Shown piece by piece: positions 27,018-47,296 of a stretch of 64,000 nt of DNA. The position numbers were made by a program, and so were the translations under genes. The stretch lies in contig CBFDEM010000003.1 in NCBI GenBank assembly GCA_965603825.1, positions 124,001 through 188,000 on the forward strand. The letters are read 5' to 3'. The DNA comes from Blepharisma stoltei ATCC 30299 (taxonomy: Eukaryota; Protista; Ciliophora). The notes under the pieces were generated by a model. The model did no database searches. It worked only from the letters and a program-made list of their open reading frames with translations, and was not told the origin of the DNA. The stretch's first letter is position 1. Every line of letters begins with the position of its first letter.

Positions 27018-30000
27018 ATGTTGCAACCCAAGAGCAGAGGTCCTAAAGCTACAAGTCTCACCCCCACAAAGAAAAAATCCCTCCAGAAAAAGCCTTGAGA
27101 TGACCGATTTTGGCTTGGTTCGCTTCCATTAAATGACTCATCCCTTGACACAAGTTCATTCATATCTGGAGATGAAGGAAAATCATCAAAAGAGATCAAA
27201 TCTCGCAAGCTTATTCGGTTGCCTCAATTGAGTTCTCGTCCTACATCAAGCAGAGCTCGAAGTGTGGAAAGGACGCCTCAAAATAAATCAATAAATCATC
27301 TAATAGTAACTGAAGAGATGCTTAATGAAATAAAAGAAAATATTGAATGCGAATGAATTACATGGGCAATCCCTGAGCCTCAAAGAGAAGCATTTAGAAA
27401 TAGTGTTTTCAATTTGCCAAGAAATAAAGCCTATGCCATTATTAATCGAGAAATCGATGACCTTCAAAAAAGCCGCTCATTAGTCCAACTTGTGCTTAGG
27501 GCAATTACAGCAAGAGAAGAGAGCTTAAAAAGTATACAAGAAATGAATGAGTATTTATCAAAAGCTCCTGATTGAGATAAACTAAAAGAAGTTCAGCTTG
27601 AATGTGCAGAGCTTCTTCATGCTCATAGGATTTTGACTTTAAATGTTGTTGAAAGCATTGTAAAGTGAAGAGAGCAGCTTGTATACGCAATGCTGCTAAA
27701 TCAAACTGATAGTTCTAAAAAAACCTTAATACCTTTTATATGGGAAGGAATCAATTATATTGAAAAAATGAGGCACGATTTAGACTTTCTCTATAGCTCA
27801 GATTTTTCTAAAGTATTTCTATTCAGCGAAAAGCCAGACCCACTGCTAAAAACTCCATCAAGAATCCAAGGTGGATCTCGGCACAAATCAAGGATAAAAG
27901 ATGGCTATTTTATGGATGACGGAAAAGTTGTTATTCCTTTGCCTAGCGCTTTAATGAAAAGAGTAAGTATCGCTGAAATGGTGATTTTAGAAAACACCAG
28001 CAGCGAATGGGAAACTATACAAATCGACTCAACCCCAACCTCAAAATCATCAAGAGAATTATCTACTACAAGCAATAATAGGCTAAAACAAAGAAAACCT
28101 AATGAAGAAGCTAGAATGGCACAAAATATGTTGGATTGTATAATTGAAGAAGAAGTAGAGATTGATGTGCAAGAAATTGTGGTAAAAGTAAGAAAAGAAG
28201 AACAGCAGAGGGTCAATAATGATGCCACCGCTAAATATGTAATGGACGAAATCCTGAAAAAGGAGATTTTAGAGACTATAAGAGAAATTGCAGTTAGCAC
28301 TTATAGCCCACAGTTTAATGCAAACATGGAAAAATACGTAGAAAATATGGCTAACAAAATGATAGAATCAGAAGTCCTAAGAACAATCGATACAATTGCT
28401 AAAGACGAGTTAAGAAATGCCAAGGAGCAACTTAAAAAGGCAAAGGAAGACGATAAACGGAAAAAAGGTGAAGATATTAATTTGAATAAATATTTTTTTG
28501 AAGTGATTTTGGCGGAAGTTGTTAAAAGTATGACCGAATTTGAAGTGGAAAATATTTCAAAAGAAATCAAAGATAGAGCTGCTAAAAAGAAAATGGAAAT
28601 TGAAAAGAAAAAAATCGAGGAAGAGAATACAACTTTTTCAAGACAAATTTTTATGAATTTCTTATATGAAATTGTGGGGGAAATTGCGAAAGAAATGTAT
28701 GAAATTAAAGAAAATGAAGAAAGAGAGAAAAAAGAGATAGCTAAGAAAAATAATGAAAACTTGGAGCTTGCGAAGCTGATATATGAAAGTTTATTTGAAA
28801 TTGCTATAAAAATCAGGCTAGAGGAGTTTTCAAAAGTATCAATAAATGAAGTTAAAACGGAATTAGAGAACGCAGAAAAGAGAAAAGCTGTAGAATCTGA
28901 AAAGAAAAAGAAAATGGAAGAAATATGCCAGCTTACAAATATTTTCATAAAAGATCTCACTTGTGAAGCTATTTCAATAATGATCCAAACTGAGCTAAAA
29001 TCTTGTGAAAATGAAAGACTTGCAGAATTAATATTTGAAGACTTCATAACTCTCAGTGTGAAAACCCTAAAAGAATCACAAGCAAATGAATCTTTAATAG
29101 AAGAAAAAACTCTTCAAGCTTCAGAAAACGACACAAAGCTCCAAAACTCTATAATTGCTGACCAAATTTATGAAGAAATGTACCGAGACATAGAATCTGA
29201 CATCCTGCCGCTCATTAAAAAAGAAATTGATGATATGACTCAAAGAAAACTCCAAGAAGAAGAAAAGCTACAAAGCACCAAAGCAAGGCAACTTTTACAG
29301 TCACAAATTGAAGAAATGATCCAAAGAAATTTAATTGAAACGGTAATAGATGAGCTAAAAGTGAATATTTTTGCAGAAAATATCATAAATGAAGAAATTG
29401 AAGCAAAAAAATTATCAACTCAGAATGAAACGGAAAGGAAAAAAATTGAGGAAAAAGAAAAAGCGTTGGAAAATGAAAAAATTTGTAGTATTTTGTATGA
29501 TGAAATTGTGAATGAATTTTTAAAAGAAGCTTGGGTTGGACAGCTGTCAGAAAATATGATAGAAAATGCAAATATGCTGGAAAGAAGAAGAACCACAGTA
29601 GTTCCGCAGCTAATTTTTAGTGACTCAATTGCAGTGGAGGTTAAAGAAGCTGAAGATTACGCAATTGAAAATTTCACTCCAGGGATGCATAGTCCTAATA
29701 TATATTCAATCCGAGATAATGATATTCCAGAAGAAGAAAAATCAATATCTTCTGTGAGAAGTGGCATTTTTGAAGACCTTGGGCTTGATTTTGCAACTAT
29801 AGACTCCTTTAGAGACCTAGGCTCTTTAGAGTTCAAGCCTTTAAATATCCAAGAACACCTAATCGGTCACGTTTTAAACGAATATTTCCGATTTATCCCA
29901 TCTTTAATAAAAGCTGCATTTCCTAACATTGAACAGCTAAAACAAGAAGTCATGAACGGAATTGACGCATGCTGATACTGGGCTTTAAAAAATGAAAAAA

Positions 30001-31289
30001 TCCTTGGACTCTTGATATATTCTTTAGATCCTTCATATAAAACAGGCAGGAATTTAATAATTCACCACATCTCGTGTTTACACGAAAAATCGTACCCTCA
30101 AATCATAGATTTAGCGACTACTTTTTTATGAAATATAGACACCTGTGACGAAATTAGGGTAAATTTATTTTCTGGGATGGGAAATGACATCCCAAGCCAA
30201 ATTAAAAAAATTTTTACAAATTTGAAATTTAAATGGAAAACTCATTCATCAATAGTGAAATATAATGCAGATTTGACGGTGATGGGGAAGATGAGGACCA
30301 ATATTAAGCCAAATGCTGATGCAAGAAGCCAGAATAGTGACCCATTTGTGCTTAAAAGTTTTTGTATAGTAGAGCCAAGCAATGAAGAAGCGAAGTCTCA
30401 TGATATCACTTGTCCTGAAATGATACAGGTAGGAAATCGACAGTGCCTAGTCAGTGCAATTTTAAATCTGTTTGGCCAGCTAGCTAAAAGTGGCATTAAT
30501 TTGACAATGGAGCCTAAAACAAGGCTGCAAAGAGACATTTCTGACGTCTTAGAAATCATCAACTCTACCGACTCCTATACCTTCCCTTTCATAAAATCCA
30601 GCTTTTTTTCTTCCCAGCCCTCAGCCCAATCATTTCTTCAAGAAAATAAAATTTCTCCATCCTTAATTTCTTCCTCAAAATCCTCAATTTCCATTTTAGA
30701 GCTCAATTTCAACTGAATTTCCTGTACAAATCTCATAACTTCCTTAAAATCCCAAAACTACAAATTTATCAGATTTAAATCATCAGAAATCAAGCACTGC
30801 AAAAACGCCGATAATTGTGAACTTTTTTGGGTTCCTACAGGCCAAGCAGGGATTTCTGCATTTTTTATAGATTTTGAAGGAATAAAAGACGAGCTTTCAG
30901 CAGATTTGAGAAGAAATAAAACTGATTTGTTTTATAAGCTTGAAGATTTATTTCAGAGCATGAATTTAGCGAAAGAAGGAGTTATTGAGTTGTGGGTCCC
31001 TGCGTTTAAGAAAAAAGTAAGTTGGGTAATCCCGTGGATCCAAGGGTATGAAATACCTGAGCAGCATGGAGAAAATGAGTCACAATATGTCAAAAAATGT
31101 ATTGAGGATGTAAATATTGAGATTAATGTGCCACCACCTGCACCAGGGATACTTGAAGTAGGAAAAATAAGGGGGAAATTTTTTAAAAATGATTTTATAT
31201 TTGGGCTGGTTAATAGGAATGGGGATAAGATCTTGGATTTGCCTTTGATTACATGTCTTGTTGAGCAAAATGACTGGACATTAGCATAA
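27018..31289 (+). CDS. large multidomain protein, paralog A (~1423 aa): conserved N-domain, acidic helical stalk, GNAT-like and serpin-like regions
   Basis: Single frame from ATG 27018 to TAA 31289 with only TGA interruptions; colinear homology with 43616-47296. Confidence 0.85.
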
Positions 31290-31485
31290 TGATGGAATTA
31301 ATTGTTAAATGTTAATAAATTTAGATTTTGTAGTCAAGCCAAGCAAATTTTATATAATTTTAGCTCGAATACTCAGTTTTCTTTCTGTTGATAATTATAT
31401 AGATATATAGGTAAATAAAATCTTTTGTTTTATGCATATAAAAGCATAATATATATTTTTCAATAAAAACAATATATTTTTTAGA

Positions 31486-32445
31486 ATGAAAAAATGGGCC
31501 GAAGAGTTGGTAGAAGCATTTCAAAGTTGCAACAAAAATAAAATTCGACAAATTTTCAACAATGGTTTCCCACACAGTGGAGTTTTGCATTTAAAAAATA
31601 CCTCTGGAGAAATCTTAATTAGTAGAACTTATCCTATTCATTTTGCTGCAGAATATGGATATATTGACATATTACAAGAACTTTTTAATGCAGGCGCTGA
31701 TGTAAATGCTCTTGATTCTTATCAAAGAACGCCTCTTATGGTGAGTTGTGGAATGGGAAATTTAGATATCGTAAGATATTTAGTAGAAGAAGCTGATGCT
31801 AATATAGGAGGTTATGATTATAATGGAAATACAGTTATACATATCTCATCTTTAGCTGGGCAGTATCACATTTTACGATATTTAGTTGAAGATTTACAGA
31901 TTCCTATAAATTTATCAAATAAATATAAACGAACTGCTTTAACACTTTGCCAGAAATCTCAAGAAAAAGCATCTGGTGAATTATCTTGGAAATTAGAAAG
32001 AGTAATCGGCTATCTTTCATCTCAGCAAAATAAGCACACTCCTGCCTTGTTTACTCCTTTAAGGCCAAAGCAGCAAGAGTCAGTTAGAAGAAGCTGCCAC
32101 TCAAATTGTATAAGCCGATATAATCAAAGCTTGTGGGCTGATTCTGTGGGGATTAGGGTCCATCAGTTTCATTCTCCTAAGCAAGATAGATTTGCATTTA
32201 GCCAATTTGCGCATAAAAATTTAGGCTCAAACAGAAAATTTTCTGTGGATACTCCATCAGTTGATAGAATGATTAGGAATAAATGTGACTTGATATATGA
32301 TAAATATATGAATAGTCATCAGCTGATGGTTACAATAAGAGAAAAATCAAATGATCAAAGCTTGGTGCCACTGTATAGAAAGAATTCAGCGCCTTCGCTG
32401 ACTGGTATTTCAACATCAAAATATAATAAATCAGAATTATATTAA
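31486..32445 (+). CDS. ankyrin-repeat protein
   Basis: YPIHFAAEYG...GADVNA, RTPLMVSC, GNTVIHIS, RTALTL. Confidence 0.9.
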   Translation: MKKWAEELVEAFQSCNKNKIRQIFNNGFPHSGVLHLKNTSGEILISRTYPIHFAAEYGYIDILQELFNAGADVNALDSYQRTPLMVSCGMGNLDIVRYLVEEADANIGGYDYNGNTVIHISSLAGQYHILRYLVEDLQIPINLSNKYKRTALTLCQKSQEKASGELSWKLERVIGYLSSQQNKHTPALFTPLRPKQQESVRRSCHSNCISRYNQSLWADSVGIRVHQFHSPKQDRFAFSQFAHKNLGSNRKFSVDTPSVDRMIRNKCDLIYDKYMNSHQLMVTIREKSNDQSLVPLYRKNSAPSLTGISTSKYNKSELY

Positions 32446-32524
32446 ATTTTTTAATTAAATTTTCCTTTTATATGGCGAAAAATATAAAAAAGTTAATGTT
32501 TTGATTTTTTGACAAAAGCAAGAT

Positions 32525-33466
32525 TTAGCAAATTATCATATTTTCTAACAAAAATTTATCGAGCATCTTGGGGGCATTCAATTTCATATCTTTATGTGAC
32601 ACAATAGATATTGGCGGAATAGTGCCATCTTTTTTGATTTTAAACATCACTGCATAATAAATATCTCCTGATAGCTTCCTACACCCCAAAATTCTAGCAG
32701 GCTGCAAATCTTGTCAGTTTCCCTTATTTGCTTCATCCTTAGACTTATTAGAAACTCTACTCGAAGTTTCTGACTCTTCTTCTATATTGCTTTCCTCTAC
32801 ACTATCCTGAGAATTTCTATATGAAATTTCTTCTTCATTTTCTGCATCTTCTAACCCTTCACTACTGGCTTGTTTTGCATCTTCTTCACTAATTTCTCTA
32901 TAAGCTGTTTCCGATTTTCTTGGAATTTCTGCCTTAAATCTTGAATTATTATTAGTTACTGGTATTTTTGGTTCATAACTTTGTATAGACTTTTTTTGAG
33001 GAAAAGACGAAGCCATTGTAATTCTTTTTTCCTCTCTTACTTTATTTAAAATTTCATTAACTTCTTGACATTGTGATGATCCTGTAGGTTTTTTCTCTGG
33101 AGGGCTTTGGATTTCTAATGTATCATTTGGTAATAAATCGTCAAGTTTTAGCTTTTTGTTTGCATCATCTCCATAGAGTTTTCCTTGCTCTGCAAGCTTT
33201 TGCTCTCTTTCAAGTCGGCGCCTTTCTCTCAGTCTAGCATTTCTTCTCTTGCACTGTTCTCGCCTTAGCAATTGCTTCCTTTCTTGCTTTTCATTAAATT
33301 GCTCAAGAAGATCAGGGACAGACTTAACTGTTTCTTCAGGTTCTCAGGTGTTATCGGCAGAGGAAAATCCTTTTCATTTGATTTGGTAGCGCCAGGAATT
33401 AAGCGCGGTTGAAAATTTCTTATCTACAATAGATTCAATGACATAAAGGCTATCGTGATCCCCCAT
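32525..33466 (-). CDS. HP1-like protein (chromodomain, hinge, chromo-shadow domain; ~313 aa)
   Basis: ATG 33466; YVIESIVDKK...YQIK-W(TGA)-KGFSSADNT-W(TGA)-EPEE; C-terminal PARILGCRK...YYAVMFK...NAPKMLDKFLLENM. Confidence 0.85.
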
Positions 33467-33625
33467 TAAATTTATTTAGTTTTTTATTATCGTTAATTAA
33501 AATTATGGAGTCATATTTTTATGGGAAAATTATTGATAAAATCAACAAAAAATTATAAGAGAAGATTGTAAAACCTAAAAACAATAAAGATTTATTATTT
33601 ATTCTACTGATTAAAAAAGAGATCA

Positions 33626-35692
33626 TTAGTTACTAGAAATATTCCAATTCCTAAGAATATTTTTGGCACCTCTTAACAATGCAATCGCTTCTTTGCAGTC
33701 TTCTCTTTTCTTTGGAATGATTTTTCCCTCATCCAAAATTTTTTCATTGAATTTTTCACCAAGTAATTGAGCAACCAATGAATCCTTGAGCGACTCCTGC
33801 ACATCATGAATCAGAAAGCTTAAAATTGCCTTTGGAACATAGTCTCCAATGTTTTTTCTAACGATTCCAAAATATGACTTTACAAGGATTCTCACAAGCT
33901 CTATATTTTTTAAATCACTCTGATTTAATGTTATTGTTTTATTTGTTGGGCTTTGGCCAACACCCGAAGTTTGCTGGCTACTAGGGAAAATACTATTTGT
34001 TTTATTTGTTGGGTTTTGGCCAAAACCCAAAGTTTGCTGGCTGCTTGGGAAAAGACTATTTTGGGCAGGTGCTTGCTGATTGCTAGAAAGGCTGGTAAAT
34101 GGCGATTGTTTAGATAGGTTTCCATTATTTTGAGTAGTGCCAAATAAACTGTCGCCTTGGACTGGTACTTGCATTTTTAGCTGATTTCCATTAGCTTCAT
34201 CAAACTTTTTTGTTTTTTCAATAGCAATACGTCCCCCAATGAAATCAGGATGATGAATATTTATATAATTGTTTTCCATATCAAATATCCTTTTTATCAT
34301 ATCATAAGTACTCTCATATTTATCTTCAATAATTTTCTCTGTAATTTCGCTTATTAAAAGATGCAGATTTTTAAACCTACTAAAATAAGGACTTGAAATT
34401 TTCTGAGTCAAAGCTAAAAGTGAATCTTTTACTAAATGAAGAATTTGAAAAGAAGGTGCTCTAATGCTTTCTATTGCTTTTCTCGAAAATACTCTGAATG
34501 TTTGTTCTGGGATCAGCAAAGTTCCATGAATTCCATTTGTGCTGCTTATTTGCTCCAATATTTCATTATCTGTAATTTCTTCCATTGGATTAATTTGTTT
34601 TAGTTTATCTTCAAAAAATGAAAATAAAATTTTCCTGATTTGCGTACCTGTCTCGTCTTTGTCAGTTCTTCCTTCTATAGTTTCCTCTAAAAATCTACAA
34701 TAATCGCTAGCTATTTTTATAATTATATTTTGCTGCAAAGCCTTATTTTCACCGATAGGATCTCCGTAATTTTCGAGCTCATTACTTCTATGTTCAAGTT
34801 GGAAATCGATTCCCTCCTTTATGCTAGGAAGTGCACGTTTGAGTTTTTCAAATAATATTTCTTGAAGTCTTTGAGTTAAATAAGGAATCCCTGCTTGATC
34901 TTGAATTAGCTTATAGTCAGGATGGGTCCTGAAGAATTCAGCCTCTTTATCCAAATGATCTAAAATTGAGACATTATTGGTAATATCAGCTTGAGATCTA
35001 CAAACAACACCAACATACCCATGAGCTAATGGATACTCTTCACCAAGCAAGACATTTATTGCACTTGTTCCTTTATCCATAATATCTAGCTTTGTAAGCA
35101 CACCTAAAGTTCTTTCTCCTCTTGGATCGACGTCTCTTGCAATTTTTAACGCATCGGAATTTGCTATATCATTATTTCCAGGAGAAATAGCTAAAATAAT
35201 GGCATTTTCCTTTTTAATATAATCTAAAACCATTTCTTCGATTAAAACTGATATATTTCGTGGCTGGTCTCCAACAGGATTTTTCGTTAGCCCAGGCAAA
35301 TCAACCAAAGTTATATTTACAACCAGTGGTGAATAAATCTCAAGAAGAATTGGCTGGTCAACAATCGCTTTTCTGCTCCCTGCTTTTTTGTTTGTTTCAG
35401 CAATAATTTCGTCTCTAACCTTGGCAAAGTCTTTAAATATAACACTTGGGAGATGCTGGAATATTGCAAATTCTTCTTCATCATTATGGCATTGGATGAT
35501 TAGAGGCATTCTTGTCACTATTCCTTGGCCTCGGGGAAGAAAATCTTTTCCAACAATACTTTCTAGCACGCTTGATTTCCCCGCAGATTGAGCACCAACG
35601 ACTACAATTTGAGGGAGTGAAATATCAACTTTAACATGGGAGAGATTGACTAGTTTTTGTAGCTCGTTAACTTTAGCTAGCAGACTTTCCAT
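33626..35692 (-). CDS. dynamin-related GTPase, copy 1
   Basis: LPQIVVVGAQSAGKSS, GIVTR, LVDLPGLT, TKLD, middle domain, GED (SYF..VRKNIGDYVPKAI); no PH domain. Confidence 0.95.
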   Translation of the reverse strand: MESLLAKVNELQKLVNLSHVKVDISLPQIVVVGAQSAGKSSVLESIVGKDFLPRGQGIVTRMPLIIQCHNDEEEFAIFQHLPSVIFKDFAKVRDEIIAETNKKAGSRKAIVDQPILLEIYSPLVVNITLVDLPGLTKNPVGDQPRNISVLIEEMVLDYIKKENAIILAISPGNNDIANSDALKIARDVDPRGERTLGVLTKLDIMDKGTSAINVLLGEEYPLAHGYVGVVCRSQADITNNVSILDHLDKEAEFFRTHPDYKLIQDQAGIPYLTQRLQEILFEKLKRALPSIKEGIDFQLEHRSNELENYGDPIGENKALQQNIIIKIASDYCRFLEETIEGRTDKDETGTQIRKILFSFFEDKLKQINPMEEITDNEILEQISSTNGIHGTLLIPEQTFRVFSRKAIESIRAPSFQILHLVKDSLLALTQKISSPYFSRFKNLHLLISEITEKIIEDKYESTYDMIKRIFDMENNYINIHHPDFIGGRIAIEKTKKFDEANGNQLKMQVPVQGDSLFGTTQNNGNLSKQSPFTSLSSNQQAPAQNSLFPSSQQTLGFGQNPTNKTNSIFPSSQQTSGVGQSPTNKTITLNQSDLKNIELVRILVKSYFGIVRKNIGDYVPKAILSFLIHDVQESLKDSLVAQLLGEKFNEKILDEGKIIPKKREDCKEAIALLRGAKNILRNWNISSN
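33935..34060 (-). repeat. 63-nt (21-aa) tandem duplication in the dynamin copy 1 insert
   Basis: NSLFPSSQQTLGFGQNPTNKT / NSIFPSSQQTSGVGQSPTNKT; one unit in copy 2, none in copy 3. Confidence 0.9.
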
Positions 35693-35694
35693 TC

Positions 35695-36185
35695 AATAAT
35701 TATGCAAATGTCTATAAAATGGACAAAATTTCTGCTTAAAAATAAGGAATAAATAGTTATCAATTTCTTAAATTAATAATTGAATAATTGCATTTTTTAA
35801 TGATATTTATAAATAGGGCTTTTAATTATTCCCGAAAAATATTCATAATGTTTATTATAGTTAATACAGATTTAAATGCAAAATTACTTTTATTTATGAA
35901 TTTTTTTTGATGTAAGAGTATTAAAATAATAGAAAAAAAATTACCTGTCTAGGACAAATATCTAGCTTATTATTAGATATAGATCTCAATAAGAAAAGTT
36001 TTATATTCACAATTCTTATGAAATTAATGAGAATTTTGTGATGCGAATTGCTTAAAATCAGCAATATTCTAACATTTATCTCTATCTAGAGCTTCTCATT
36101 TTCTAATCTTAAAAGCTATTACGAATAAAATCATTTTTAAACACGAATGTAGCCAATTTGATTATTAAGTTAAATAAATTCTGAG
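35695..36185. repeat. duplicated intergenic blocks of the dynamin array
   Basis: 35695-35755 matches 39747-39800; 35789-35911 matches 38459-38575; 35941-36185 matches 39835-40096. Confidence 0.85.
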
Positions 36186-36299
36186 TAATATTTTTTGAAA
36201 AAGTTATTAATAAAACCCAAAAATTATAAGAGAAGCATATAAAACCTAAAATAATAAAGACTTATTAACAAAAAATATTCTATTAATTAAAACATATCA

Positions 36300-38291
36300 T
36301 TAGTTATTAGAAATATTCCAATTCCTAAGAATATTTTTGGCACCTTTTAATAACGCAATCGCTTCTTTACAGTCTTTTCTTTTCTTTGGAATGATTTTTC
36401 CTTCATCTAAAAGTTTTTCATTGAATTTTTCACCAAGTAGTTCAGCAATCAATAAATCCTTGAGCGACTCCTGCACATCATGAATCAGAAAGCTTATAAT
36501 TGCCTTTGGAACATAGTCTCCAATGTTTTTTCTAGCAATTCAAAAATATGAATTTACAAGGATTCTTACAAGGACTATATTTTTTAACTCGCTCTGATTC
36601 GCTGCTATCGTTTTATTTGCTGGGCTTTGACCAAAAGGCTGAGTTTTCTGGTTATTAGGGAAAGGACTACTTTGAGCAGGTGCTTGTTGAGAACTAAGTA
36701 AACCTGTGGAAAAGGGTTTAAACAGGCCTTCAAAATTTTGATTAGGGCTAAACAAGCCTGCCCTTAAGTTTGATGCTTGGAATTTTAGCTGATTTTCATT
36801 AAGAGCTTCAATTTCTTCAATAGCTTTGCGTCCCCCAATGAAATCAGGATGATGAATATTTATATAATTCTTTTCCATATCAAATATCCTTTTTATCATA
36901 TCATAAGTATTCTTATATTTATCTTCAATTATTTTCTCTGTAATTTCACATATCAAACGATGTAGATCTTTAAACCTGCTAAAATAAGGGTTTGAAATTT
37001 TTTGAGTCAAGGTTAAGAGTGACTCTTTTACTAATTCAAGAATTTTAAAGGAAGGCACTCTAATGCTTTCTATTGTTTTTTTTGAAAGTTTTCTGAATGA
37101 TTGTCCTGGAATCAATAAAGTTCCATGAATTCCATTTGTGCTGCCTATTTCTTCCAATATTTCGTTATCTGTTATTTCTTCCATTGGATTAACTTTTTTT
37201 AGATTATCTTCAAAAAGTGTAAATAAAATTTTCCTGATTTTTGTGCCTGTATCATCTTTGTCAGTTCTTCCTTCTACAGCTTCCTCTAAAAATCTGGAAT
37301 AATCGTCAACTATTTTTATAATTATATTTTGCTGTAAAGCCTTATTTTCACTGATAGGATCTCCGTAATTTTCGAGCTCACGATTTCTTTGTTCAAGTTG
37401 GGAATCGATTCCTTCCTTTATGCGAGGGAGAGTTTGTCTGAGCTTTTCAAATAATATTTCTTGAAGTCTTTGAGTTAAATAAGGAATCCCTGCTTGATCT
37501 TGAATTTGGCTATAGTCAGGATTGTTGCTAAAGAATTCAGCCTCTTCACCCAAATGATCTGATATTGAGACATTATTGTTAATATCGTCTTGAGATCTAC
37601 AAACAACACCAACATACCCATGAGTTAATGGATATTCTTCACCAAGCAAGACGCTTATTGCACTTGTTCCTTTATCCATAATATCTAGCTTTGTAATCAC
37701 ACCTAAAGTTCTTTCTCCTCTTGGGTCGACGTCTCTTGCAATTTTTAACGCATCGGAATTTGCTATATCATTATTTCCGGGGGAAATAGCTAAAATAATG
37801 GCGTTTTCCTTTTTAATATACTCTAAGACCATTTCTTCAATTAAAGCCGATATATTTCGTGGCTGGTCTCCAACAGGATTTTTTGTTAGCCCTGGCAAAT
37901 CAACCAAAGTTATATTTACAACCAGTGGTGAATAAATCTCAAGAAGAATTGGCTTGCCAACAATCGCTTTTTTGCTCCCTGCATTTTTGTTTGTTTCAGC
38001 AATAATTTCGTCTCTAACCTTGGCAAAGTCTTTAATTATAACATCTGGAAGATGCTGGAATATTGCAAATTCTTCTTCATTGTTATGGCATTGGATGATT
38101 AGAGGCATTCTTGTCACTATTCCTTGACCTCGAGGAAGAAAATCTTTTCCAATAATACTTTCTAGCACGCTTGATTTCCCTGCAGATTGAGCACCAACGA
38201 CTACAATTTGAGGGAGTGAAATATCAACTTTAACATGGGAGAGATTGATTAATTTTTGTAGCTCGTTTACTGTAGCTAGTAGGCCTTCCAT
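36300..38291 (-). CDS. dynamin-related GTPase, copy 2 (~663 aa)
   Basis: Close paralog of copy 1; TGA at 36540 reads as Trp and the frame continues (IARKNIGDYVPKAII...WNISNN) to TAA at 36300. Confidence 0.92.
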
Positions 38292-38722
38292 TAATTATAA
38301 AAGGGGGAACTACTTTAAAAATGGAATAAATATTAATTAATTTCTTAAATAATTATGTTTTTAAGATTGAATTAACTCTTTAAAGGTACTAATCTATTAA
38401 TAGCATCCAGTTAGATAATATCTTTGCCGATTTAACTTCAAATTTAATTCTAATAGAGTGCATTGTTTAATGATATTTATAAAATAGGGCTTTTAATTAT
38501 TCCAGAAAATATTTATACTATGGTCAATACAGATTTAAATGCAAAATTAATTTTATTTATGAATTTCTTTTGATGCAAGCAGATTTAATATATACATATA
38601 GAAAATCTACTCTATCTTATAATTGATTAATTCACTTGCTGCTAAGAGCATAAACAAACATTTATAGAGAAAATAAATTAGACCTTTTGCATTTTAATAT
38701 TGCGCCAAATATAATTCCTATA

Positions 38723-38800
38723 AAAGATGAGCCTAATAGATAACACAAGCAAAACTCCACAATCCCAAAGATGTGCCTAATAGATAATGCAATACAAACT
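38723..38800. repeat. 44-nt-period direct repeat
   Basis: aaagatgagcctaatagataa (38723) and aaagatgtgcctaatagataa (38767). Confidence 0.7.
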
Positions 38801-39009
38801 TCATAATACAAATTAAATTATTTATTTGTTAAAAAATGTAAATTTTATTGATACTTTATCAAGATTTGCCGAATAAACCTTTTTAATAAAATCTTTAGTC
38901 TTCATTACAATTTTTAATATTTTTGAAAATTTAAGACTAATGCTTAATTAATCAAAAGTGATCCTTCTAATTCGCAAAAATATAATTTTGAAGTTTTGAA
39001 TTAAAAAAT

Positions 39010-39744
39010 AATATATTTTTGCCTGCCTCATAAATGTCACCTATACTTTTATTCTTCTTCTATCCAAAGTATTCTCTAAATATTTGTGATAATCATCAAT
39101 GATTTATAATAATATTTGCTTGAAAATCTTTATTATCAACAATAGGGTCCCCGTATTTTTAAACTTTTTTTCTTTCTTCACGTTACTCTACTTGGGTCTG
39201 AATCTCTTGCAATTTTAATGCATTTGAGTTGGTATGTAATTATTTCCAGGGAAAGTTGCTAAAATAATGACATTTCTTTATCAATTCATTCTAGTATCAT
39301 TCTTTTGATTAAGGCAGACATATTTCGTGGCTGGTCTCCAACTGGATTTTTAGAAAATCCAGGCAAATCAACCAAAGTTATATTGACGACATTTGGTAAA
39401 TAAATTTCAAGAAGAATTGGCTGATCTATAATCCCTTTATTATTTCCTGCCTTTTTATTGTTTCTGCTATAATTTCCTCTCTAAATTTAAATATCACTTG
39501 CGAGCTATACTGAAATATTGCAAATTCTTCGGAATGTAATGGGATTGAATAATTAGAGGTAATCTTGCTACAATTCCACTTCCTCTAGGAAGAAAATTTT
39601 TCCCAATAATATTCCTAAAACACTGGACTTGCCTACAGATTGAGCTCCAACAGCCACAATTTGAGGAAGTGAAATTTTAACTTTAGCACGTGAGAGATTG
39701 ATCAGTATTTGTAACTTATTTGCAATAGATAGCAAGCCTTCCAT
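39010..39744 (-). pseudogene. dynamin-related pseudogene
   Basis: MEGLLSIANKLQ...GAQSVGKSSVL, then frameshifts and TAA/TAG stops; retains NITLVDLPGFSKNPVGDQPRN; large internal deletions jump to YGDP.../KIIDDY and then to an RQAK-like C-terminal remnant. Confidence 0.9.
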
Positions 39745-40093
39745 TAAATAATTATGCAAATGTCTATAAAATAGGTAAATTCCTACTTAAAATTAAGGAA
39801 TTATAAAATTGAGATTTTTATTAAAATTAATATTTTACCTGTCTATGACAAACATCTAGCTTATTATTAAATATAAATTTCAAGAAGAAAAGTTTTATAT
39901 TCACAATTCTTATGGGTTAATGAGAAATTTGTGATGTGAATAAATAAATTATTCAAATAATTGATTAAAATCAGCAATATTCTAGCATTTATATATAATT
40001 AGAGCTTCTCATTTTCTAATCTTAAAAGCTATTATGAAAAAATTTATTTTTAAGCATGAGTGTAGCCAACTAGATTATTTAGTTAAATAAGTT

Positions 40094-41953
40094 CTAAGTG
40101 CTTGGCAGACCCCATTGCCTGAGAATGGCTTTTGCTTGTCTAAGTGTTTTTATAGCTGATTTGCAAGCTTCTCGTTTTTGTGGTATGAGTTTTCCTTCGT
40201 CTAAAGTTCTTTCAAGAATCTCATCTTTTAATAACTTATCACTCAAGTGATTGCCTAATGTCCTCATAACCTTCATAACAAGGAAAAACATTATTGCCTT
40301 TGGAACCATATCTCCAATAGTTTTTTTTACTATATCAAAGTAAGACTTTATTAGCAATTTTGTTACTTCAACATATTTCTTTTCATCAGATATTATAGGA
40401 GTGCTGACTTTTTGGCCTGGGTAGTTTTGTGCAATCTTCTCTTTTTCCTCTTCAATTTTTTGATTAATTTTAGCAAGAGCTACAATTCCTCCCATGAAAT
40501 CAGGGTGCTGGATATTAATATAATTGTATTCCATAGTAAATATGTCATCTATGATTTCAGATGTAGTTTTGTAGCAATCTTCAATTAGTGATTCAGAAAT
40601 TTCGCATACTGACACATGGAAAATACTAAACCGTCTAAATTCATCAACTTTAATGCGTTTTATTAAGGCTGAAATCGTATCCTTTACAGATTCAAATGCA
40701 TCAATAGCCGGCTCTTTAAGCAAATTAACTGTAGACTGTGCAAGAGTTCTAAATGCTTGCTCAGGAATGAGTAAAGTTCCATATATACCATTTGAGTTGC
40801 TAATTTCGTTTTGGATTAATCTATCGTTGGAGCATATAAGAGGATTTATCTCCCTGGTTTTTCTTTCCAAATTGTCAAATAAAATATTTCGAATTTTAGT
40901 GCCTTCGTTATTTTCAGAGCTATCTTTGCCTTCTAATACTTCTTCTAAGTTTCTGGAGAATTCACGGATAACTTTAAGTATAATATTTCTCTCCAAATCT
41001 CTATTTCCTTTAACTGGTTCGCCATAAATTTTTGCTTCAACTTCTCTTTCCCTCAACTGACGATCAATGCCAGCTTTTATGCTTGGAAGAGTTTTTTGTA
41101 AATGATCAAAAAGGATTTCTTGAAGTTTTTTAGTTAAAAATGGAATGCCTGTTTGGTCCTGAATTTCTTGATAATCAGGATGATTTCTAAAAAAATCGGC
41201 TTCTTTTTCTAAATGATCTGCTATTGGAACATTATTCTTGATATCTTCTTGATTTCTACAAACAACTCCAATATGTCCAAACTTTAAGGAGTATTCTTCA
41301 CCAAGAAGAATATTTATGGCACTAGTCCCTTTATCCATAATATCCAGCTTTGTAATCACGCTTAAAGTCCTTTCTCCTTTCGGATCAACATCTCTTGCAA
41401 TTTTTAAAGCGTCTGAGTTTGCGATATCATTATTTCCTGGAGAAATTGCTAAAATTAAAGCATGTTCTGCTTTTATATATTCCAAGGCCATCTCCTCGAT
41501 CATAGAAACAATATTTTTTGGCTGATCTCCAACAGGGTTTTTAGTGAGTCCAGGCAAATCTACTAATGTAAGATCAATAACTTGTGGGGAATGAATTTCA
41601 AGAATGATTGGCTGGCTAACAACACCTTTATTATTTCCTGCTTCTTTTATTGTATCTCTTTCGATTTCTTTTCTAACTTCATTAAAGTCATCAAATAAAC
41701 GATCCTGGCAATGATGGAATACAGCGTACTCACCCTCTTCTGTATGATGACATTGAATAATAAGAGGTCTACGTGTTACAATCCCACTACCTCTAGGAAG
41801 GAAGTCTTTTCCAACAATACACTCTAGCACACTTGATTTGCCAGCAGATTGAGCTCCAACCACGACGATTTGAGGTAGCGAAATGCTAACGCGGACATTG
41901 GAAAGGCTGATTACTTTTTGTAGCTGGTTAACGATTGATAGTAAACCTTCCAT
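40094..41953 (-). CDS. dynamin-related GTPase, copy 3 (most canonical)
   Basis: GAQSAGKSS, GIVTRRP, LTLVDLPGLT, ITKLD, GED SYFDIVKKTIGDMVPKAIM; short variable insert. Confidence 0.95.
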   Translation of the reverse strand: MEGLLSIVNQLQKVISLSNVRVSISLPQIVVVGAQSAGKSSVLECIVGKDFLPRGSGIVTRRPLIIQCHHTEEGEYAVFHHCQDRLFDDFNEVRKEIERDTIKEAGNNKGVVSQPIILEIHSPQVIDLTLVDLPGLTKNPVGDQPKNIVSMIEEMALEYIKAEHALILAISPGNNDIANSDALKIARDVDPKGERTLSVITKLDIMDKGTSAINILLGEEYSLKFGHIGVVCRNQEDIKNNVPIADHLEKEADFFRNHPDYQEIQDQTGIPFLTKKLQEILFDHLQKTLPSIKAGIDRQLREREVEAKIYGEPVKGNRDLERNIILKVIREFSRNLEEVLEGKDSSENNEGTKIRNILFDNLERKTREINPLICSNDRLIQNEISNSNGIYGTLLIPEQAFRTLAQSTVNLLKEPAIDAFESVKDTISALIKRIKVDEFRRFSIFHVSVCEISESLIEDCYKTTSEIIDDIFTMEYNYINIQHPDFMGGIVALAKINQKIEEEKEKIAQNYPGQKVSTPIISDEKKYVEVTKLLIKSYFDIVKKTIGDMVPKAIMFFLVMKVMRTLGNHLSDKLLKDEILERTLDEGKLIPQKREACKSAIKTLRQAKAILRQWGLPST

Positions 41954-42296
41954 TACTATTAGCTAATATCTACATAATTTTTAGAGATTTCTTTTTTAAC
42001 TTAGGGGTCTTTATTAATAAATCTTATTAATGAGTGTCTCTGTGAATTTTATTTATAATTTTAGCATTTTTAGAGTTAAGAAATTTGGGCTGATTTGTTT
42101 TAATATTAATTTTTCCACTCCAAATTTCATATTATGTAAACAGCCTAGTTTAAAGTCTTTTAGATATTAGTAAGTATTAAAAACTGGACAGTTAATAATA
42201 ATTAATTTTAAAAATTGCATTTTAAAGTAATATTAAGATGTTCCAAATTCTATGCTATTCTAAGCAGTCCATTTGCATTTTAATATATAAGTATTT

Positions 42297-43478
42297 ATGA
42301 CTACAAAAGAAGAGCTTAAAAGATATATCCAAACTAAGCTTCACAGCCTTCTCGAAGATATGGTGACAAGTATTCTTTTAGAACAGCCAAAAACACCTGA
42401 ACAATTTATGCTTGATTGATTAATATCTCGATCAAATACCCAATTAACAGATAGCGAAAGAAATGAATTGGCTTCTTTAAGATCAGAATACAAGTCCTTG
42501 ACTGAACAAAACAAAGATTCCTCAGCTTCTAACAGTGAAACTGATGAAAGTGACCAAGAATCTGAAGAAGAAGTACCTGTAGCTCCTCAGAAAAAAATGA
42601 AGGCAAGAGCATCTGTAAGCGCTGAAGCTTTTGGGCTTTGAAACAAAAAATCTGCTTTTAAGCCAAGATTTATACCTAAAAGTGATGAACAAAAGGCAAG
42701 AATTTCAGAAAGACTTAGTAAAGCGTTTATGTTCGCCGCACTAGATGATAATGAAAGAGAAATTGTAGTCAATTCTATGGAAGAAAGAAGGTTCCAAGGA
42801 GGCGATCAAGTAATTACACAAGGTGATGATGGAAACGAGCTATTTGTAGTCGATAGTGGAAAACTTGAGTGCAGCAAAGTTTTTGTTAAAGGAGAGCCAT
42901 CTAAGTTTTTGAAGTTTTATGAGCCTGGAGACTCATTTGGAGAGCTTGCACTGCTATATAATGTTCCAAGAGCTGCATCAATAAAAACAGTCACTGATTG
43001 CATATGTTTTGTTTTGGACAGAGATTGCTTTAATCATATCGTAAAAGATTCAGCTGCAAGAAAAAGAGAAAGATATGAAAACTTTTTGGCAAGCGTAGAA
43101 CTATTAGAAAATATGGACCCATATGAGAGGTCACAGATTTCTGATGCCTTGAAGACTGCAGTTTTTAAAGAAGGCGATAAAGTAATTACTGAAGGAGAAT
43201 GGGGTGATGAATTCTATATGATTGAAGAAGGAACTGCTATAGCAACAAAAACATTTAATCCTGGAGAGTCGCCAAAAGAAGTGAAAACTTATAAGCCTGG
43301 GGATTATTTTGGAGAGCTTTGCTTACTTAGAGGGCAGCCTCGTGCTGCTAATATTATTGCAACGAGTAAGCTGTCATGTGTGACTTTAGGTAGAAAAGCA
43401 TTTAAGAGGATGCTAGGGCCTCTAGATGATATTTTAAGAAGAAATGCTAGAAAATATGAAGGAATATTAGGGATTTAA
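42297..43478 (+). CDS. PKAR: cAMP-dependent protein kinase regulatory subunit
   Basis: ATG 42297; N-terminal dimerization/docking-like helices, inhibitor site KARASVSAEAFG, two cNMP domains (FGELALLYNVPRAA, FGELCLLRGQPRAA). Confidence 0.95.
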
Positions 43479-43615
43479 TAATAATATCAAGTATAAATTT
43501 AAATGTAAATCAAAATTAATCAATTGAATAAGTATTTTTTATTATCATGTGAGCTCCTATTTAATTTATAAATTAAGCATTCAATAATTATTAAAGAAGT
43601 AATTAATTCATTAAT

Positions 43616-46600
43616 ATGTCAACGCTTCAGCTGCTTAAACAGAAAAATAACTCAAAAACTTCAGCAGCAAAAGTATCTTCTAAATAGGATCAATGAGGAC
43701 CACCAAGATCAAGATCAAGCTCATCTCAAGCATTAAAAACAAATCGTATCAGATATGCTTTGCAAGATGAAACAAAATCCTCAATAGAAAGCCAAAATTC
43801 TTTAAAAGCTCTCAAACTTCCGCCACTACCAGTAGCTGAAATTTCGTCCAAACCTTCATTTATAAGTGAAGATGACCCTAGCAAGTTAGCTTCAACATCT
43901 GAATCCGATTTAGAAAATATAAAAAATAGCTTAGAGTCAGAATGATCAACAAGAAACATCCCTGAAGACCTGAGGATTCCTTATAGAGAGTCCATTTTTC
44001 AATTGCCTCGCCATAAGGCGCATCTAATAATCTCAAAAGAAATTTATGATTTGTCTAAATCCAAAGCCTTAATTCAAATTGCAATTCGTGCAGTTATAGC
44101 AAGAGAAGAAAGTTTGAAAAACATTCACGAAATGGATGAGTTTTTGCAAAATTCAGGAAACTGGGAGAGTATAACTGATGTTCAGTTAGAGACTGCAGAA
44201 CTGCTGCATGGGCATAGAATGCTCACATTGAGTGCAGTTGAAAGTATTATAAGATGAAGAGAGTCTTTATATGCGGCATCTCTTATTAATCAAGTTGAAA
44301 AGCCAAAAAAAATCCCTTTCATATGGAATGGAGAAAACTATATTAAAAAAATGAAAGCAGATATGGACTTTTTAAAAAGCTCCTCCTATAGCAAAGTTTT
44401 TAATTTTGAAGATGGTGCTGACCCTCTTCTTGTAAGGCCTTCAAAAATCGAAAAAAAAGAAAAAGTAAACAAAAGAAATACAAATTATTTTATAGACCAA
44501 GGACAAGTTTTTGTACCACTACCATCATCGCTACAAAAACGAGTCCAAGCAGCAGAAGAAGCCATCTTTGGAGAAGATATTGAAAAAATCCCTGAAGAGT
44601 CCCCATCAATTTATATGAGCCGAACCAGCAGCTCTTCAGACTTAAGTGATAAATTATCAAATTCCCCTCAAATGACCCACAGCAAAGTGTTAAAAACAAT
44701 TGTAGAAGAAATCATTGAAGAAGAGATTGATGAAAAATTAGAAGACACAGTCAGAGAAGCAAAGCAAGAAGAAGAAATAAAAAATCAAAAAATAAATTTG
44801 ACAAAAATGATTTTTGATGATATTTTAAATGAAGTTATAGAAAAAGAATGCCCAATAATAGCAGAAAACGAAATTAAAAATAAGAAAGATGTCAATGAGA
44901 AACTGAAAGGGTATTATGTTAGCTCTTTTATTGAAGATGAAATAATTAAAAATTTAAGAGAAATTGCGAAAGCGGAAATAGAAGCTGCTAAAAAAAAGCA
45001 AAAAGAAAATAAATTGGTTTCTGAAGATGTTTTCGAAAAATTATTAATTATATTGATAAGAGAGGTGGTTGAGTTAGAAGTTGATAGAGAAAAGAAGATG
45101 GCTAATAATACAAAATTAGCAAAAAATATTGTAGGCTCTCTTGTAGATGAATGTGTTGAAAGGCTTTTAAAAGAATTCGCTGATACTGCAATAAATGATG
45201 CAAAAAAGGTGTTTGAGAAAGATTTAAACGATATGAACTCAAAAATTGCATTAATAATTGCAAATCAATTAATTGATGAAATTGTTCTAAATAATGAAGA
45301 TTTTGGGATCAATAGCATTTCTGAGTCAGCATTGCAAGAAATGAAACAAAACCACAAAGAAAAAATTGAGCAGTTCAATTCAAATTTGGCACTTTTGATT
45401 TATAATGAAATAGTAGACAGTCTTATTAATGGAAACTCAGATCTTAATATGCATAAAATAGCAGAAATAGCCTTGAAATCAACAGAAAAAGAGAGCGCAA
45501 AAATGATTGAAGATATAAGCTTGATTATATATAACGAGCTCTTTGATTATCTTATATACCAATATTCAGAATTCAACCTATCTAATATTGCAGAAATGAC
45601 AGTAGATGAAATTAAGAAAAAAATTAAAGAAACAAAAGATAAAGAGCTGCAGGGGTTAGCCAATGTAATTTATGGCTCATTATTAGATGAGCACATTGCT
45701 GATACAAATTTAAATCGACTAAGCAATAAGGAAATAAGACTTGAAGAACAAAGAGCAAGAGACTTAAAAGCAAGAAGCGAAGTCATAGAAGAGTTAGGGC
45801 TTGACTTTGCTTACCAAGAAGATTTCCAAGACCTCTCAAACGTAGAATTTCGACCTATTGGTGTCCCTGAAATTATGATTATCAGTGTTCTTGATGAATA
45901 TTACCGCTTTATTCCAGAAATCTGCAAACCTTCACTTCCCACCATAATGCAGCTTCTAAATGAAATCACCCGCGGTATCAATCCTTGCTGATACTGGGCT
46001 TTAAAAGAAAATCGCATTCTTGGGCTTATAGTCTACACTCAAGATTGTATAGGTCAATTAGAATCCAATTTAATTATCCATCACTTCTCATGCCTAAACT
46101 GAGAAGCATACCCCGGCTTATTAGAAGCCACCAAAAAGTTTTTATTCAGCAACGATAAATTTGATGAAATTAGGGTCAATTTAATTGCAGGAGAAATCCA
46201 AGAAGTCCCACTTGATGTTAAAAGGATTTTTAGTAAGGGAAAATTCAAATGGAAAGCAAACTCTGAAACTGAGGATAAATATGATATAGCAATTATGGGC
46301 ATAACTAGGGCTAATACTAATATTATTTTGACGCCTAGGAAAACACAAAACCAGACAATAAGAGTTGTCTCTGGATGCTGTATCGAAATTGATAATGAGA
46401 CAAATGGATTAAATCTAGAAATAGGGGAAGAGTCTATGCAGATAGGAAATAGACAATGCTTGATTAATTCTATACTAGGACTTATGGGACAACTTGTGAA
46501 AAATCAAATTAAAGTGTCACAGCTTGGCCTGAGTAATCTGCATAACGATATTTCTAATATTTTAGAATACGCAAGCAGCTCTGAAAGCTTTAATTTCCCA

Positions 46601-47296
46601 TATATGAGCTCTATAATAGCTACAAATAAAATTGAGGCATCTGAATTTATTCAAAAAAATAAAATGATGCTTCCTACTCCAAGAGGCAAAAGTTCAATTT
46701 CTTGCCTTGATATTTCATTTCGATGGCCAAGCTGCACTTTTATTCACCAAAAAGTTTTTGAAAATGACTATCATTTTATGCGATTTAAATCAAATAAACT
46801 TTCCTGTGCCAGAGTAAATGATTTTATGATATTTAAAGTCCCTACTGAATTTTCTAATTTATTTACATTTTTTATTACAACAAATGATGATTTAAAGCAG
46901 GATTTGGCTTCTGAAATATATAAAAGGAAAAATGATATTTTTTATAAAGCTAATAGTATATTGAAACAAGTAGTAAATTTTGAGCCTATTGAAGAGCTTA
47001 GGCTGCCATGCTTTAATAAAGATTTATATCATAAACTTAGCTGAGTAAAAGGATATGAAATTCTTCCTCAAAAAGATGAGACAGGAATTCAGAAAATTGC
47101 ATCATGCAATGAATGCGTAAAACTTGAAATGAGGAACTATTCTCAGTTTGAAGGGATTTTAAGGATAAATCCACACACAGGATATATAATAGACCAAGAT
47201 TTTATTTTTGGGATTATGCACAAAAAGGTGGATATGGTATTGGATATACCTTTATTTGTATGTCTTATAGAAAAGTGTAATTGGATTGCTTGTTAA
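43616..47296 (+). CDS. large multidomain protein, paralog B (~1221 aa); 15-nt intron at 43673-43687
   Basis: Continuous frame after removing the intron and reading TGA as Trp; homologous to 27018-31289 (AREESLK, PFIWNGENYIKKM, LGLDFA, CWYWALK, DEIRVNL, QIGNRQCL, DFIFG). Confidence 0.85.
43673..43687 (+). other. 15-nt intron (gtatcttctaaatag)
   Basis: Ends in an in-frame TAG that otherwise stops the frame from ATG 43616. Confidence 0.75.

What the first reader, a model, noticed from the sequence alone, without database searches (positions are those of the whole stretch)
27018..47296. Paralog pair with an apparent GNAT-like plus serpin-like fusion on a variable helical stalk
Seen: two same-strand genes (27018-31289, 43616-47296) share three conserved blocks separated by a poorly conserved acidic helical stalk of different length. 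Block 1 is an unknown N-domain (HRxLTLxxVESIxxWRE...PFIWxGxNYIxKMxxDxDFL). Block 2 (CWYWALKxxxILGLxxY...NLIIHHxSCL...DEIRVNL...KxIFxxxKFKWK) follows GNAT strand/helix order but lacks the Q/RxxGxG acetyl-CoA loop. Block 3 follows serpin C-terminal motif order: ISxLxxxFxW (like NAIYFKGxW), FxVPT...FFI (like LELPY...MLII), ELxxPxFxK (like LPKFK), VKKCIEDVNIEIN (like VSKVVHKAxIEV) and DFIFG...LDxPLxxCL (like HPFLF...ILFxGRV), with no EGTEAAA hinge. Inference: a pseudo-acetyltransferase fused to a non-inhibitory serpin fold. I do not recognise this architecture, and it is invisible under the standard code.
Basis: partly seen in the sequence, partly recalled or inferred. Interest (0 to 1): 0.8.

Follow-up and report, generated by a model that had tools for sequence, protein, structure and literature searches.

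The report
Ciliate pseudo-GNAT–serpin microtubule scaffold family
These two genes belong to an uncharacterised ciliate protein family that joins a probable microtubule-binding end, through a spacer of very variable length, to a rigid head made of a probably dead acetyltransferase fold and a shrunken serpin fold that is unlikely to inhibit proteases, a combination I could not find described.

Summary
Observation confirmed. Both genes are intact Blepharisma stoltei genes (TGA=Trp; gene B has a 15-nt intron). The acetyl-CoA P-loop is absent in 102 of 102 homologs; no homolog has the serpin hinge and the loop is short. New here: the N-domain's best structural match is the microtubule-binding spectrin domain of PRC1/MAP65 (Z 7.3, weak alone; language-model features agree), and the basic N-tail of many homologs carries a motif resembling the sperm microtubule protein SPMAP1 (half in gene A, absent in gene B). 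The architecture occurs in 53 of 152 proteins examined (Stentor, Tetrahymena, Protocruzia among them), with stalks of 0-780 aa; this genome has 7 full copies. Best reading (0.5): a non-catalytic microtubule-associated spacer or scaffold. An N-terminal strand may fill the serpin s4A slot (unproven). No paper found describes the family. The scan flagged the GNAT+serpin head on three other pieces of this genome.

The parts
27018..31289 (+). Gene A, 1423 aa, no intron, 7 TGA=Trp codons
   Evidence: identical to deposited protein P0002
27018..27314 (+). A: basic (+11), Ser/Lys-rich N-tail, presumed disordered
   Evidence: disorder inferred from composition
27096..27128 (+). A: first half of the conserved N-tail motif (W-D/N-x-R-F-x-L-x-x-I-P-x-Y-N/D-A-x-x-D in the family); the second, SPMAP1-like half is not kept in gene A
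27315..27995 (+). A: N-domain (res 100-326), helical bundle with a short beta-hairpin; PRC1/MAP65-like spectrin module plus a family-specific extension
27996..29759 (+). A: acidic helical stalk (res 327-914), amphipathic segments alternating with E/K-rich runs
29760..30308 (+). A: GNAT-fold domain (res 915-1097) without the acetyl-CoA P-loop; conserved Y956, G997, H1017, S1019
30345..30380 (+). A: long strand (res 1110-1121) that travels with the serpin domain; candidate occupant of the s4A slot
   Evidence: placement not shown
30408..31286 (+). A: reduced serpin-fold domain (res 1131-1423); short ordered loop (about 31125-31181) in place of the reactive centre loop, no hinge
43616..43672 (+). 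Gene B exon 1 (19 codons)
43673..43687 (+). 15-nt GT...AG intron containing the in-frame TAG
   Evidence: not covered by reads
43688..47296 (+). Gene B exon 2 (1202 codons, 6 TGA=Trp)
43907..44572 (+). B: N-domain (res 93-314)
44573..45799 (+). B: acidic helical stalk (409 aa)
45800..46315 (+). B: GNAT-fold domain (res 724-895)
   Evidence: homology to the modelled region of A
46358..47293 (+). B: strand plus reduced serpin-fold domain (res 910-1221)
   Evidence: homology to the modelled region of A

Best explanation
A family of non-catalytic, cytoplasmic microtubule-associated scaffolds of ciliates. The basic N-tail (with an SPMAP1-like motif in most members) and the PRC1/MAP65-like spectrin module hold the protein on the outside of a microtubule. 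The acidic helical stalk is a spacer whose length differs between paralogs. The pseudo-GNAT and the reduced serpin domain form one rigid head that binds a partner, or itself, at a set distance, as a link or projection in ciliary or cortical microtubule arrays. Shown: genes, family, modular architecture, loss of the catalytic and inhibitory motifs. Predicted: the folds and the rigid head. Inferred: microtubule binding, spacer role, the head's binding function.
For: N-domain model (pLDDT 92): top match among 48,161 chains is the PRC1 spectrin domain (3nrx, Z 7.3, 99 aligned, 2.8 A); longer PRC1 (4l3i) aligns over model 1-167 to chain 286-443. Language-model features put MAP65_ASE1 clusters first (0.89, 184 of 256 shared). 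N-tail motif in 42 of 66 homologs against 1 in 97,624 background residues; its best Pfam match is SPMAP1-like (6 of 29 members, best E 0.0017) and its only PDB match is bovine SPMAP1 (E 0.49), an outer-surface doublet MAP (PMC11779644, PMC13406575). N-tails are net positive in all 66. No signal peptide or membrane helix by hydropathy. Stalk 0-776 aa across 71 homologs. Head pTM 0.93. P-loop 0 of 102, hinge 0 of 110. The Tetrahymena member is detected in TMT proteomes of isolated cilia (PMC12399478, Supplementary Table 18).
Against: Each microtubule cue is weak alone: Z 7.3 is in the range that helical bundles reach by chance, Foldseek and Pfam give no MAP65 match, the SPMAP1 scores are below cut-off, gene A keeps only half the motif and gene B none. 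The N-domain is not basic overall (-2, 0). The family is in no solved structure by sequence. The Tetrahymena protein is at low intensity in a list of about 4000 proteins, absent from the label-free list of the same paper, and was not found in the stored supplements of centriole, central-pair or Stentor studies (several files are cut).
Confidence: 0.5

Rival explanations
1. A scaffold with the same dead-enzyme head but a non-microtubule job (epiplasm or alveolar skeleton, membrane traffic, or another complex); the N-domain is a generic three-helix bundle.
For: The PRC1 match is statistically tied with STAT, syntaxin and other bundles (Z 6.5-7.0); no sequence-level link to PF03999; gene B lacks the tail motif.
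Against: Structure search, language-model features and the tail motif are separate methods and all point to microtubule proteins.
Confidence: 0.2
2. The GNAT domain is an atypical active acyltransferase (for instance on tubulin or a cortical protein), carried on a stalk, with the serpin domain as substrate adaptor.
For: H1017 (95%), S1019 (91%), Y956 (88%), G997 (95%) and the E-I-R and W-K motifs are conserved; two paralogs keep the GNAT domain without the serpin domain; active GNATs with atypical P-loops exist (PMC4964394).
Against: The beta4-alpha3 link is only two residues in the model, has no conserved Gly or Arg in 102 sequences, and by my register is about three residues shorter than the canonical loop, so the pyrophosphate site looks deleted rather than altered.
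Confidence: 0.15
3. The serpin domain builds polymers: the strand before it fills the s4A slot of its own sheet A or of a neighbour's (donor-strand exchange), so heads chain into filaments or lattices.
For: The 18 best serpin matches are dominated by six-stranded forms: by title, 7 peptide-filled and 6 cleaved or loop-inserted. The strand has small inward residues in its middle and travels with the serpin domain in paralogs lacking GNAT.
Against: Z differences between conformers are about 1 (near tie); I had no coordinates; coevolution did not place the strand; a monomer model says nothing about exchange between chains.
Confidence: 0.1
4. The serpin domain is a working protease inhibitor.
For: Whole serpin topology is recognisable.
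Against: No hinge in 110 sequences; the span from strand s5A to s4B is 27-33 residues against 36 in alpha-1-antitrypsin (from memory); the loop is predicted ordered (pLDDT 95-98); helix F appears to be missing.
Confidence: 0.03

Closest known systems
MAP65/Ase1/PRC1 microtubule crosslinkers (PF03999; PDB 3nrx, 4l3i)
   Same: Best structural and language-model match of the N-domain, covering the end of the rod and the spectrin domain; paired with a basic unstructured tail.
   Different: No Pfam match; no match to the N-terminal dimerisation region; the basic tail is N-terminal, not C-terminal; followed by a stalk and a GNAT/serpin head that MAP65 proteins lack.
Serpins, especially peptide-filled or cleaved forms (PAI-2 2arr/1jrr, antithrombin 1r1l) and small bacterial/phage serpin-like clusters of the ESM Atlas
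   Same: Sheet A/B/C topology, about 250-270 residues aligned at 3.5-4.2 A; TM 0.73-0.79 to the 282- and 312-aa Atlas clusters.
   Different: About 315 aa; 8-16% identity; no hinge, short ordered loop; helix A shortened and helices D/F and strand s1A apparently missing (my assignment from element order); cytoplasmic C-terminal domain packed against a GNAT fold.
GNAT acetyltransferases (3exn, 4lua, 1v0c, Naa30/Naa60)
   Same: Strand and helix order over about 140-150 residues, Z 10-11, 3-4 A.
   Different: No Q/RxxGxG/A loop in any homolog; no Pfam match above noise.
SPMAP1 / C17orf98 (PF15075; PDB 8otz, 9fqr)
   Same: About 20-residue I-P-x-Y-N-A-x-x-D-x-H motif in the N-tail of many homologs.
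   Different: Sub-threshold, 20 of 134 profile positions; SPMAP1 is a small protein; genes A and B keep half and none of the motif.
Enzyme-like folds used as structural parts of the axoneme (e.g. CFAP61; from memory; an 1135-aa chain of the sperm doublet model 9fqr was among the GNAT matches)
   Same: GNAT fold probably used without catalysis in a cytoskeletal setting.
   Different: No closer than other GNATs (Z 10.0); different partner domains; no sequence match.

Membership tests
GNAT acetyltransferases | GNAT alpha/beta fold | tested here: met
   Predicted model, residues 15-183, Z 10-11 to many GNATs; Foldseek E 4e-6 to NatC
GNAT acetyltransferases | Q/R-x-x-G-x-G/A pyrophosphate loop before helix alpha3 (PMC4964394) | tested here: not met
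   0 of 102 homologs; two-residue link in the model
GNAT acetyltransferases | Acyl-CoA binding and transfer | not testable with these tools
   Needs biochemistry
Serpins | Serpin fold | tested here: met
   Foldseek E 2.4e-7, probability 1.0; VIA Z 14-15 over about 250-265 residues; reduced relative to canonical serpins
Serpins | Sequence match to PF00079 | tested here: not met
   own genome has no PF00079 match
Inhibitory serpins | P17-P9 hinge ExGTEAAAA (bioRxiv 10.1101/2020.09.09.289108) | tested here: not met
   0 of 110 rows
Inhibitory serpins | Loop long and mobile enough to insert; stressed-to-relaxed change | tested here: inconclusive
   Span 27-33 residues and high pLDDT argue against; the transition itself cannot be tested here
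MAP65/Ase1/PRC1 | Spectrin-fold microtubule-binding domain | tested here: inconclusive
   Top VIA match but Z 7.3; Foldseek blank; ESM features 0.89
MAP65/Ase1/PRC1 | Sequence match to PF03999 | tested here: not met
   0 of 71 members among listed families; no PDB sequence hit
MAP65/Ase1/PRC1 | N-terminal dimerisation domain and C-terminal basic tail (PMC7927185) | tested here: not met
   Only a tail of about 100 aa precedes the domain; an acidic stalk follows
MAP65/Ase1/PRC1 | Conserved basic tubulin-contact residues in the spectrin domain (PMC7927185) | tested here: inconclusive
   Conserved R144, R161, R166, R204, R218 exist but no residue-level alignment to PRC1 was available
SPMAP1-like | PF15075 above cut-off over the domain | tested here: not met
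   13-14 bits against 27, positions 26-47 only

The most novel reading that the evidence does not exclude
Ciliates turned a serpin fold into a locked cytoskeletal building block: an upstream strand permanently fills the slot that inhibitory serpins use for their reactive loop, the domain is welded to a dead GNAT, and the head is set at paralog-specific distances from microtubules by a hidden MAP65-like module, so that the family acts as the crosslinker or spacer of cortical microtubule arrays in cells that show no canonical MAP65.
Probability: 0.15. Interest if true: 0.88.

Novelty: new variant of a known kind. Interest (0 to 1): 0.64.

Why it matters
For serpin biology: a Pfam-invisible, reduced, probably locked serpin fold used as one domain of a cytoplasmic multidomain protein, kept from heterotrichs to Tetrahymena. 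For ciliate cell biology: the proteins that space and link cortical and ciliary microtubule arrays are poorly known, this genome shows no Pfam-level MAP65, and here is a conserved family with a MAP65-like module and stalks of graded length. It is directly testable, since named members exist in Tetrahymena (TTHERM_00688590) and Stentor (SteCoe_29918).

Tried and rejected
Pfam scans of pieces, domains and all alignment members: nothing above noise. PDB sequence searches: nothing significant. The UniRef label 'RGS domain-containing protein' on the closest paralog is not supported: only an E 0.21 match to RGS3 over a region modelled as serpin strands. Coevolution on 94-107 effective sequences could not place the extra strand. 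No homology between N-domain and head. No tblastn match in phage records. Two PRC1 structure papers were not held. Assembly artefact or pseudogene rejected: deposited proteins, 31:7 synonymous excess, many full-length homologs. Following the operators' notes I searched pieces between TGA codons by reference or used tool-returned proteins, did not join the exons of gene B for any search, and left out the loose-end letters because they have no reference.
Full report
Source and genes. The window lies on a 41.46-Mb, 64-contig assembly, GC 33%, in which long frames appear only with TGA=Trp; the closest paralog is deposited as Blepharisma stoltei. Gene A (27018-31289) is a single frame of 1423 aa with seven TGA codons and equals the deposited protein P0002. 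Gene B begins at 43616, has a 15-nt GT...AG intron at 43673-43687 that holds an in-frame TAG, and ends at 47296; its two exons account for the deposited 1221-aa protein P0003. At six TGA codons of A that fall in aligned blocks, 54-84% of homologs have Trp. Contigs of four public runs, probably RNA, cover gene B, drop to zero in three of four runs on either side, and differ at 38 sites, 31 of them synonymous. A and B share two blocks (E 5e-73 and 1e-110) around an unconserved acidic stalk.

It is a family. The genome holds 16 N-domain loci (one weak) and 11 substantial head loci: seven with N + GNAT-like + serpin-like, two with N + stalk + GNAT-like only, two with the serpin-like domain only, the rest with N and no head. 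Because the family scans and the first word search were blank, I used the large search: 406 representatives at E below 0.001. Of 152 proteins examined, 53 carry all three blocks. Named members come from Tetrahymena thermophila (TTHERM_00688590), T. utriculariae, Stentor coeruleus (SteCoe_29918) and Protocruzia adherens, all labelled hypothetical or unnamed; one is an unnamed EukProt transcriptome entry. Metagenomic members lie on gene-dense eukaryotic contigs, two with 15-nt introns of the heterotrich kind. Every member I could name is a ciliate; range beyond ciliates is not established. The stalk runs from 0 to 776 aa in 71 homologs.

The head. AlphaFold2 on A915-1423 with 110 sequences gave pLDDT 95.5 and pTM 0.93, which predicts one rigid two-domain unit. 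Residues 15-183 of the model match GNATs (Z 10-11.3, 135-155 aligned, 3-4 A) and 217-507 match serpins (Z 14, 259 aligned, 4.0 A; Foldseek E 2.4e-7). In the ESM Atlas the nearest models are small bacterial or phage serpin-like clusters of 282 and 312 aa (TM 0.79 and 0.73 by the match). The GNAT signature loop Q/RxxGxG/A (PMC4964394) is missing in all 102 sequences and beta4 runs almost directly into alpha3. Conserved residues remain (Y956, G997, H1017, S1019), and GNATs with atypical loops can be active, so catalysis is unlikely but not excluded. The serpin domain has no hinge (0 of 110), a span of 27-33 residues between the conserved Glu of s5A and the Phe of s4B, an ordered loop, and by element order a shortened helix A and no room for helix D, strand s1A and helix F (inference). 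It has the serpin fold but fails the tests for an inhibitory serpin and for PF00079.

A possible lock. A 12-residue strand (A1110-1121) precedes the serpin core, is kept in paralogs without GNAT and absent in those without the serpin domain. Among 999 re-aligned chains, 13 of the top 18 are by title peptide-filled, cleaved or loop-inserted serpins, that is six-stranded sheet A forms, and the strand has small inward-facing residues at its middle. This suggests that the strand fills the s4A slot. The Z margin is only about 1, I had no access to coordinates, and coevolution did not place it, so this is a lead.

The N-terminal end. The model of A95-335 (pLDDT 92) is a helical bundle with a short hairpin. 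Foldseek found nothing. VIA-align ranked the PRC1 spectrin domain first of 48,161 chains (Z 7.3) and aligned model 1-167 to PRC1 286-443; ESM features ranked MAP65_ASE1 clusters first (0.89). Z 7.3 is not decisive for a helical bundle and there is no Pfam match. From memory, the W...F-x-x-x-G-x-x-Y...K-M-x-x-D ending resembles PRC1 and more closely CCDC87; I could not test this. The tail before the domain is net positive in all 66 homologs long enough to check, and 42 carry a motif starting W-D/N-x-R-F (background 1 in 97,624). Its second half matches Pfam SPMAP1-like weakly and, as only PDB hit, bovine SPMAP1, an outer-surface doublet protein (PMC11779644). Gene A has the first half only, gene B neither. 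In MAP65 proteins the spectrin domain binds microtubules and an N-terminal domain dimerises (PMC7927185); the latter is absent here, so this is not filed as a MAP65 member. The genome search found no PF03999 match, which does not prove absence.

The stalk. Acidic, without Pfam match or clear period. An AKAP-type amphipathic pattern (consensus from memory) occurs 116 times in 38 stalks against about 44 in shuffles, and 0 times in three helical controls; gene A itself is not enriched. This may mark docking helices or merely amphipathic ones.

Outside evidence. TTHERM_00688590 appears in TMT proteomes of isolated Tetrahymena cilia at low intensity, unchanged in RSP3A-KO and 0.33 log2 higher in RSP3B-KO (PMC12399478). 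The list has about 4000 proteins, so this shows that the protein is made and is only weak evidence for location. No main text in the library names it or SteCoe_29918, and searches for serpins or MAP65 in ciliates returned no description of this family.

Mechanism. Most likely (0.5) a non-catalytic microtubule-associated spacer: tail and spectrin-like module on the microtubule, stalk as ruler, rigid pseudo-GNAT/serpin head as binding module. Rivals: non-microtubule scaffold (0.2), atypical acyltransferase (0.15), polymer by strand exchange (0.1), protease inhibitor (0.03).

Verdict. Real, conserved, undescribed as far as these tools reach. The folds are known; their union and probable repurposing are not. 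Function rests on predicted structure and three weak but concordant cues. Novelty: new variant of a known kind. Interest 0.64. First-stage readers noted the same head on three other pieces of this genome; these are most likely paralogs counted here and are not independent support.

Noticed in passing
window 33626-41962 (-): Three tandem dynamin-family genes lie between genes A and B; already noted by the scan.
   Followed up: partly
window 42291-43478 (+): A gene with two cyclic-nucleotide-binding domains, like a PKA regulatory subunit, ends 137 bp before gene B; adjacency not tested in other genomes and probably chance.
   Followed up: no
window 44787 and 44990: Loose contig ends at the same two places in three of four public runs; perhaps short A-rich matches from another gene, or an allele with a different stalk segment. 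Not searched, since the letters have no reference.
   Followed up: no
L033:12045-12065; L034:5310-5330: Homologs from 47-51% GC metagenomic contigs carry a 15-nt intron at the same site in strand s4B, which truncates or lengthens by 5 aa many database proteins.
   Followed up: yes
L029:6001-9423: A pig-gut metagenome contig (31% GC) encodes a homolog with six in-frame TGA read as Trp, while another pig-gut contig uses the standard code.
   Followed up: partly
L051:898-1917 (G000:C28): 340-aa frame with a distant copy of the N-domain (E 3e-4), possibly nearer to CCDC87/MAP65; Pfam and PDB blank.
   Followed up: partly
L048 and L049 (G000:C53, C39): N-only paralogs with a 15-nt intron at the same place, both followed by the same Lsm14-like neighbour, suggesting a segmental duplication.
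   Followed up: partly
G000:C60:567641-568198: Broken second copy of the serpin-fold domain about 4 kb downstream of an intact one.
   Followed up: no
L018 (G000:C50), stalk: The 1599-aa paralog has near-perfect short E/R/K-rich repeats in its stalk, showing how stalk length grows.
   Followed up: no
G000:C5:615417-615611 (-): Weak separate match to the SPMAP1-like family (E 0.014).
   Followed up: no
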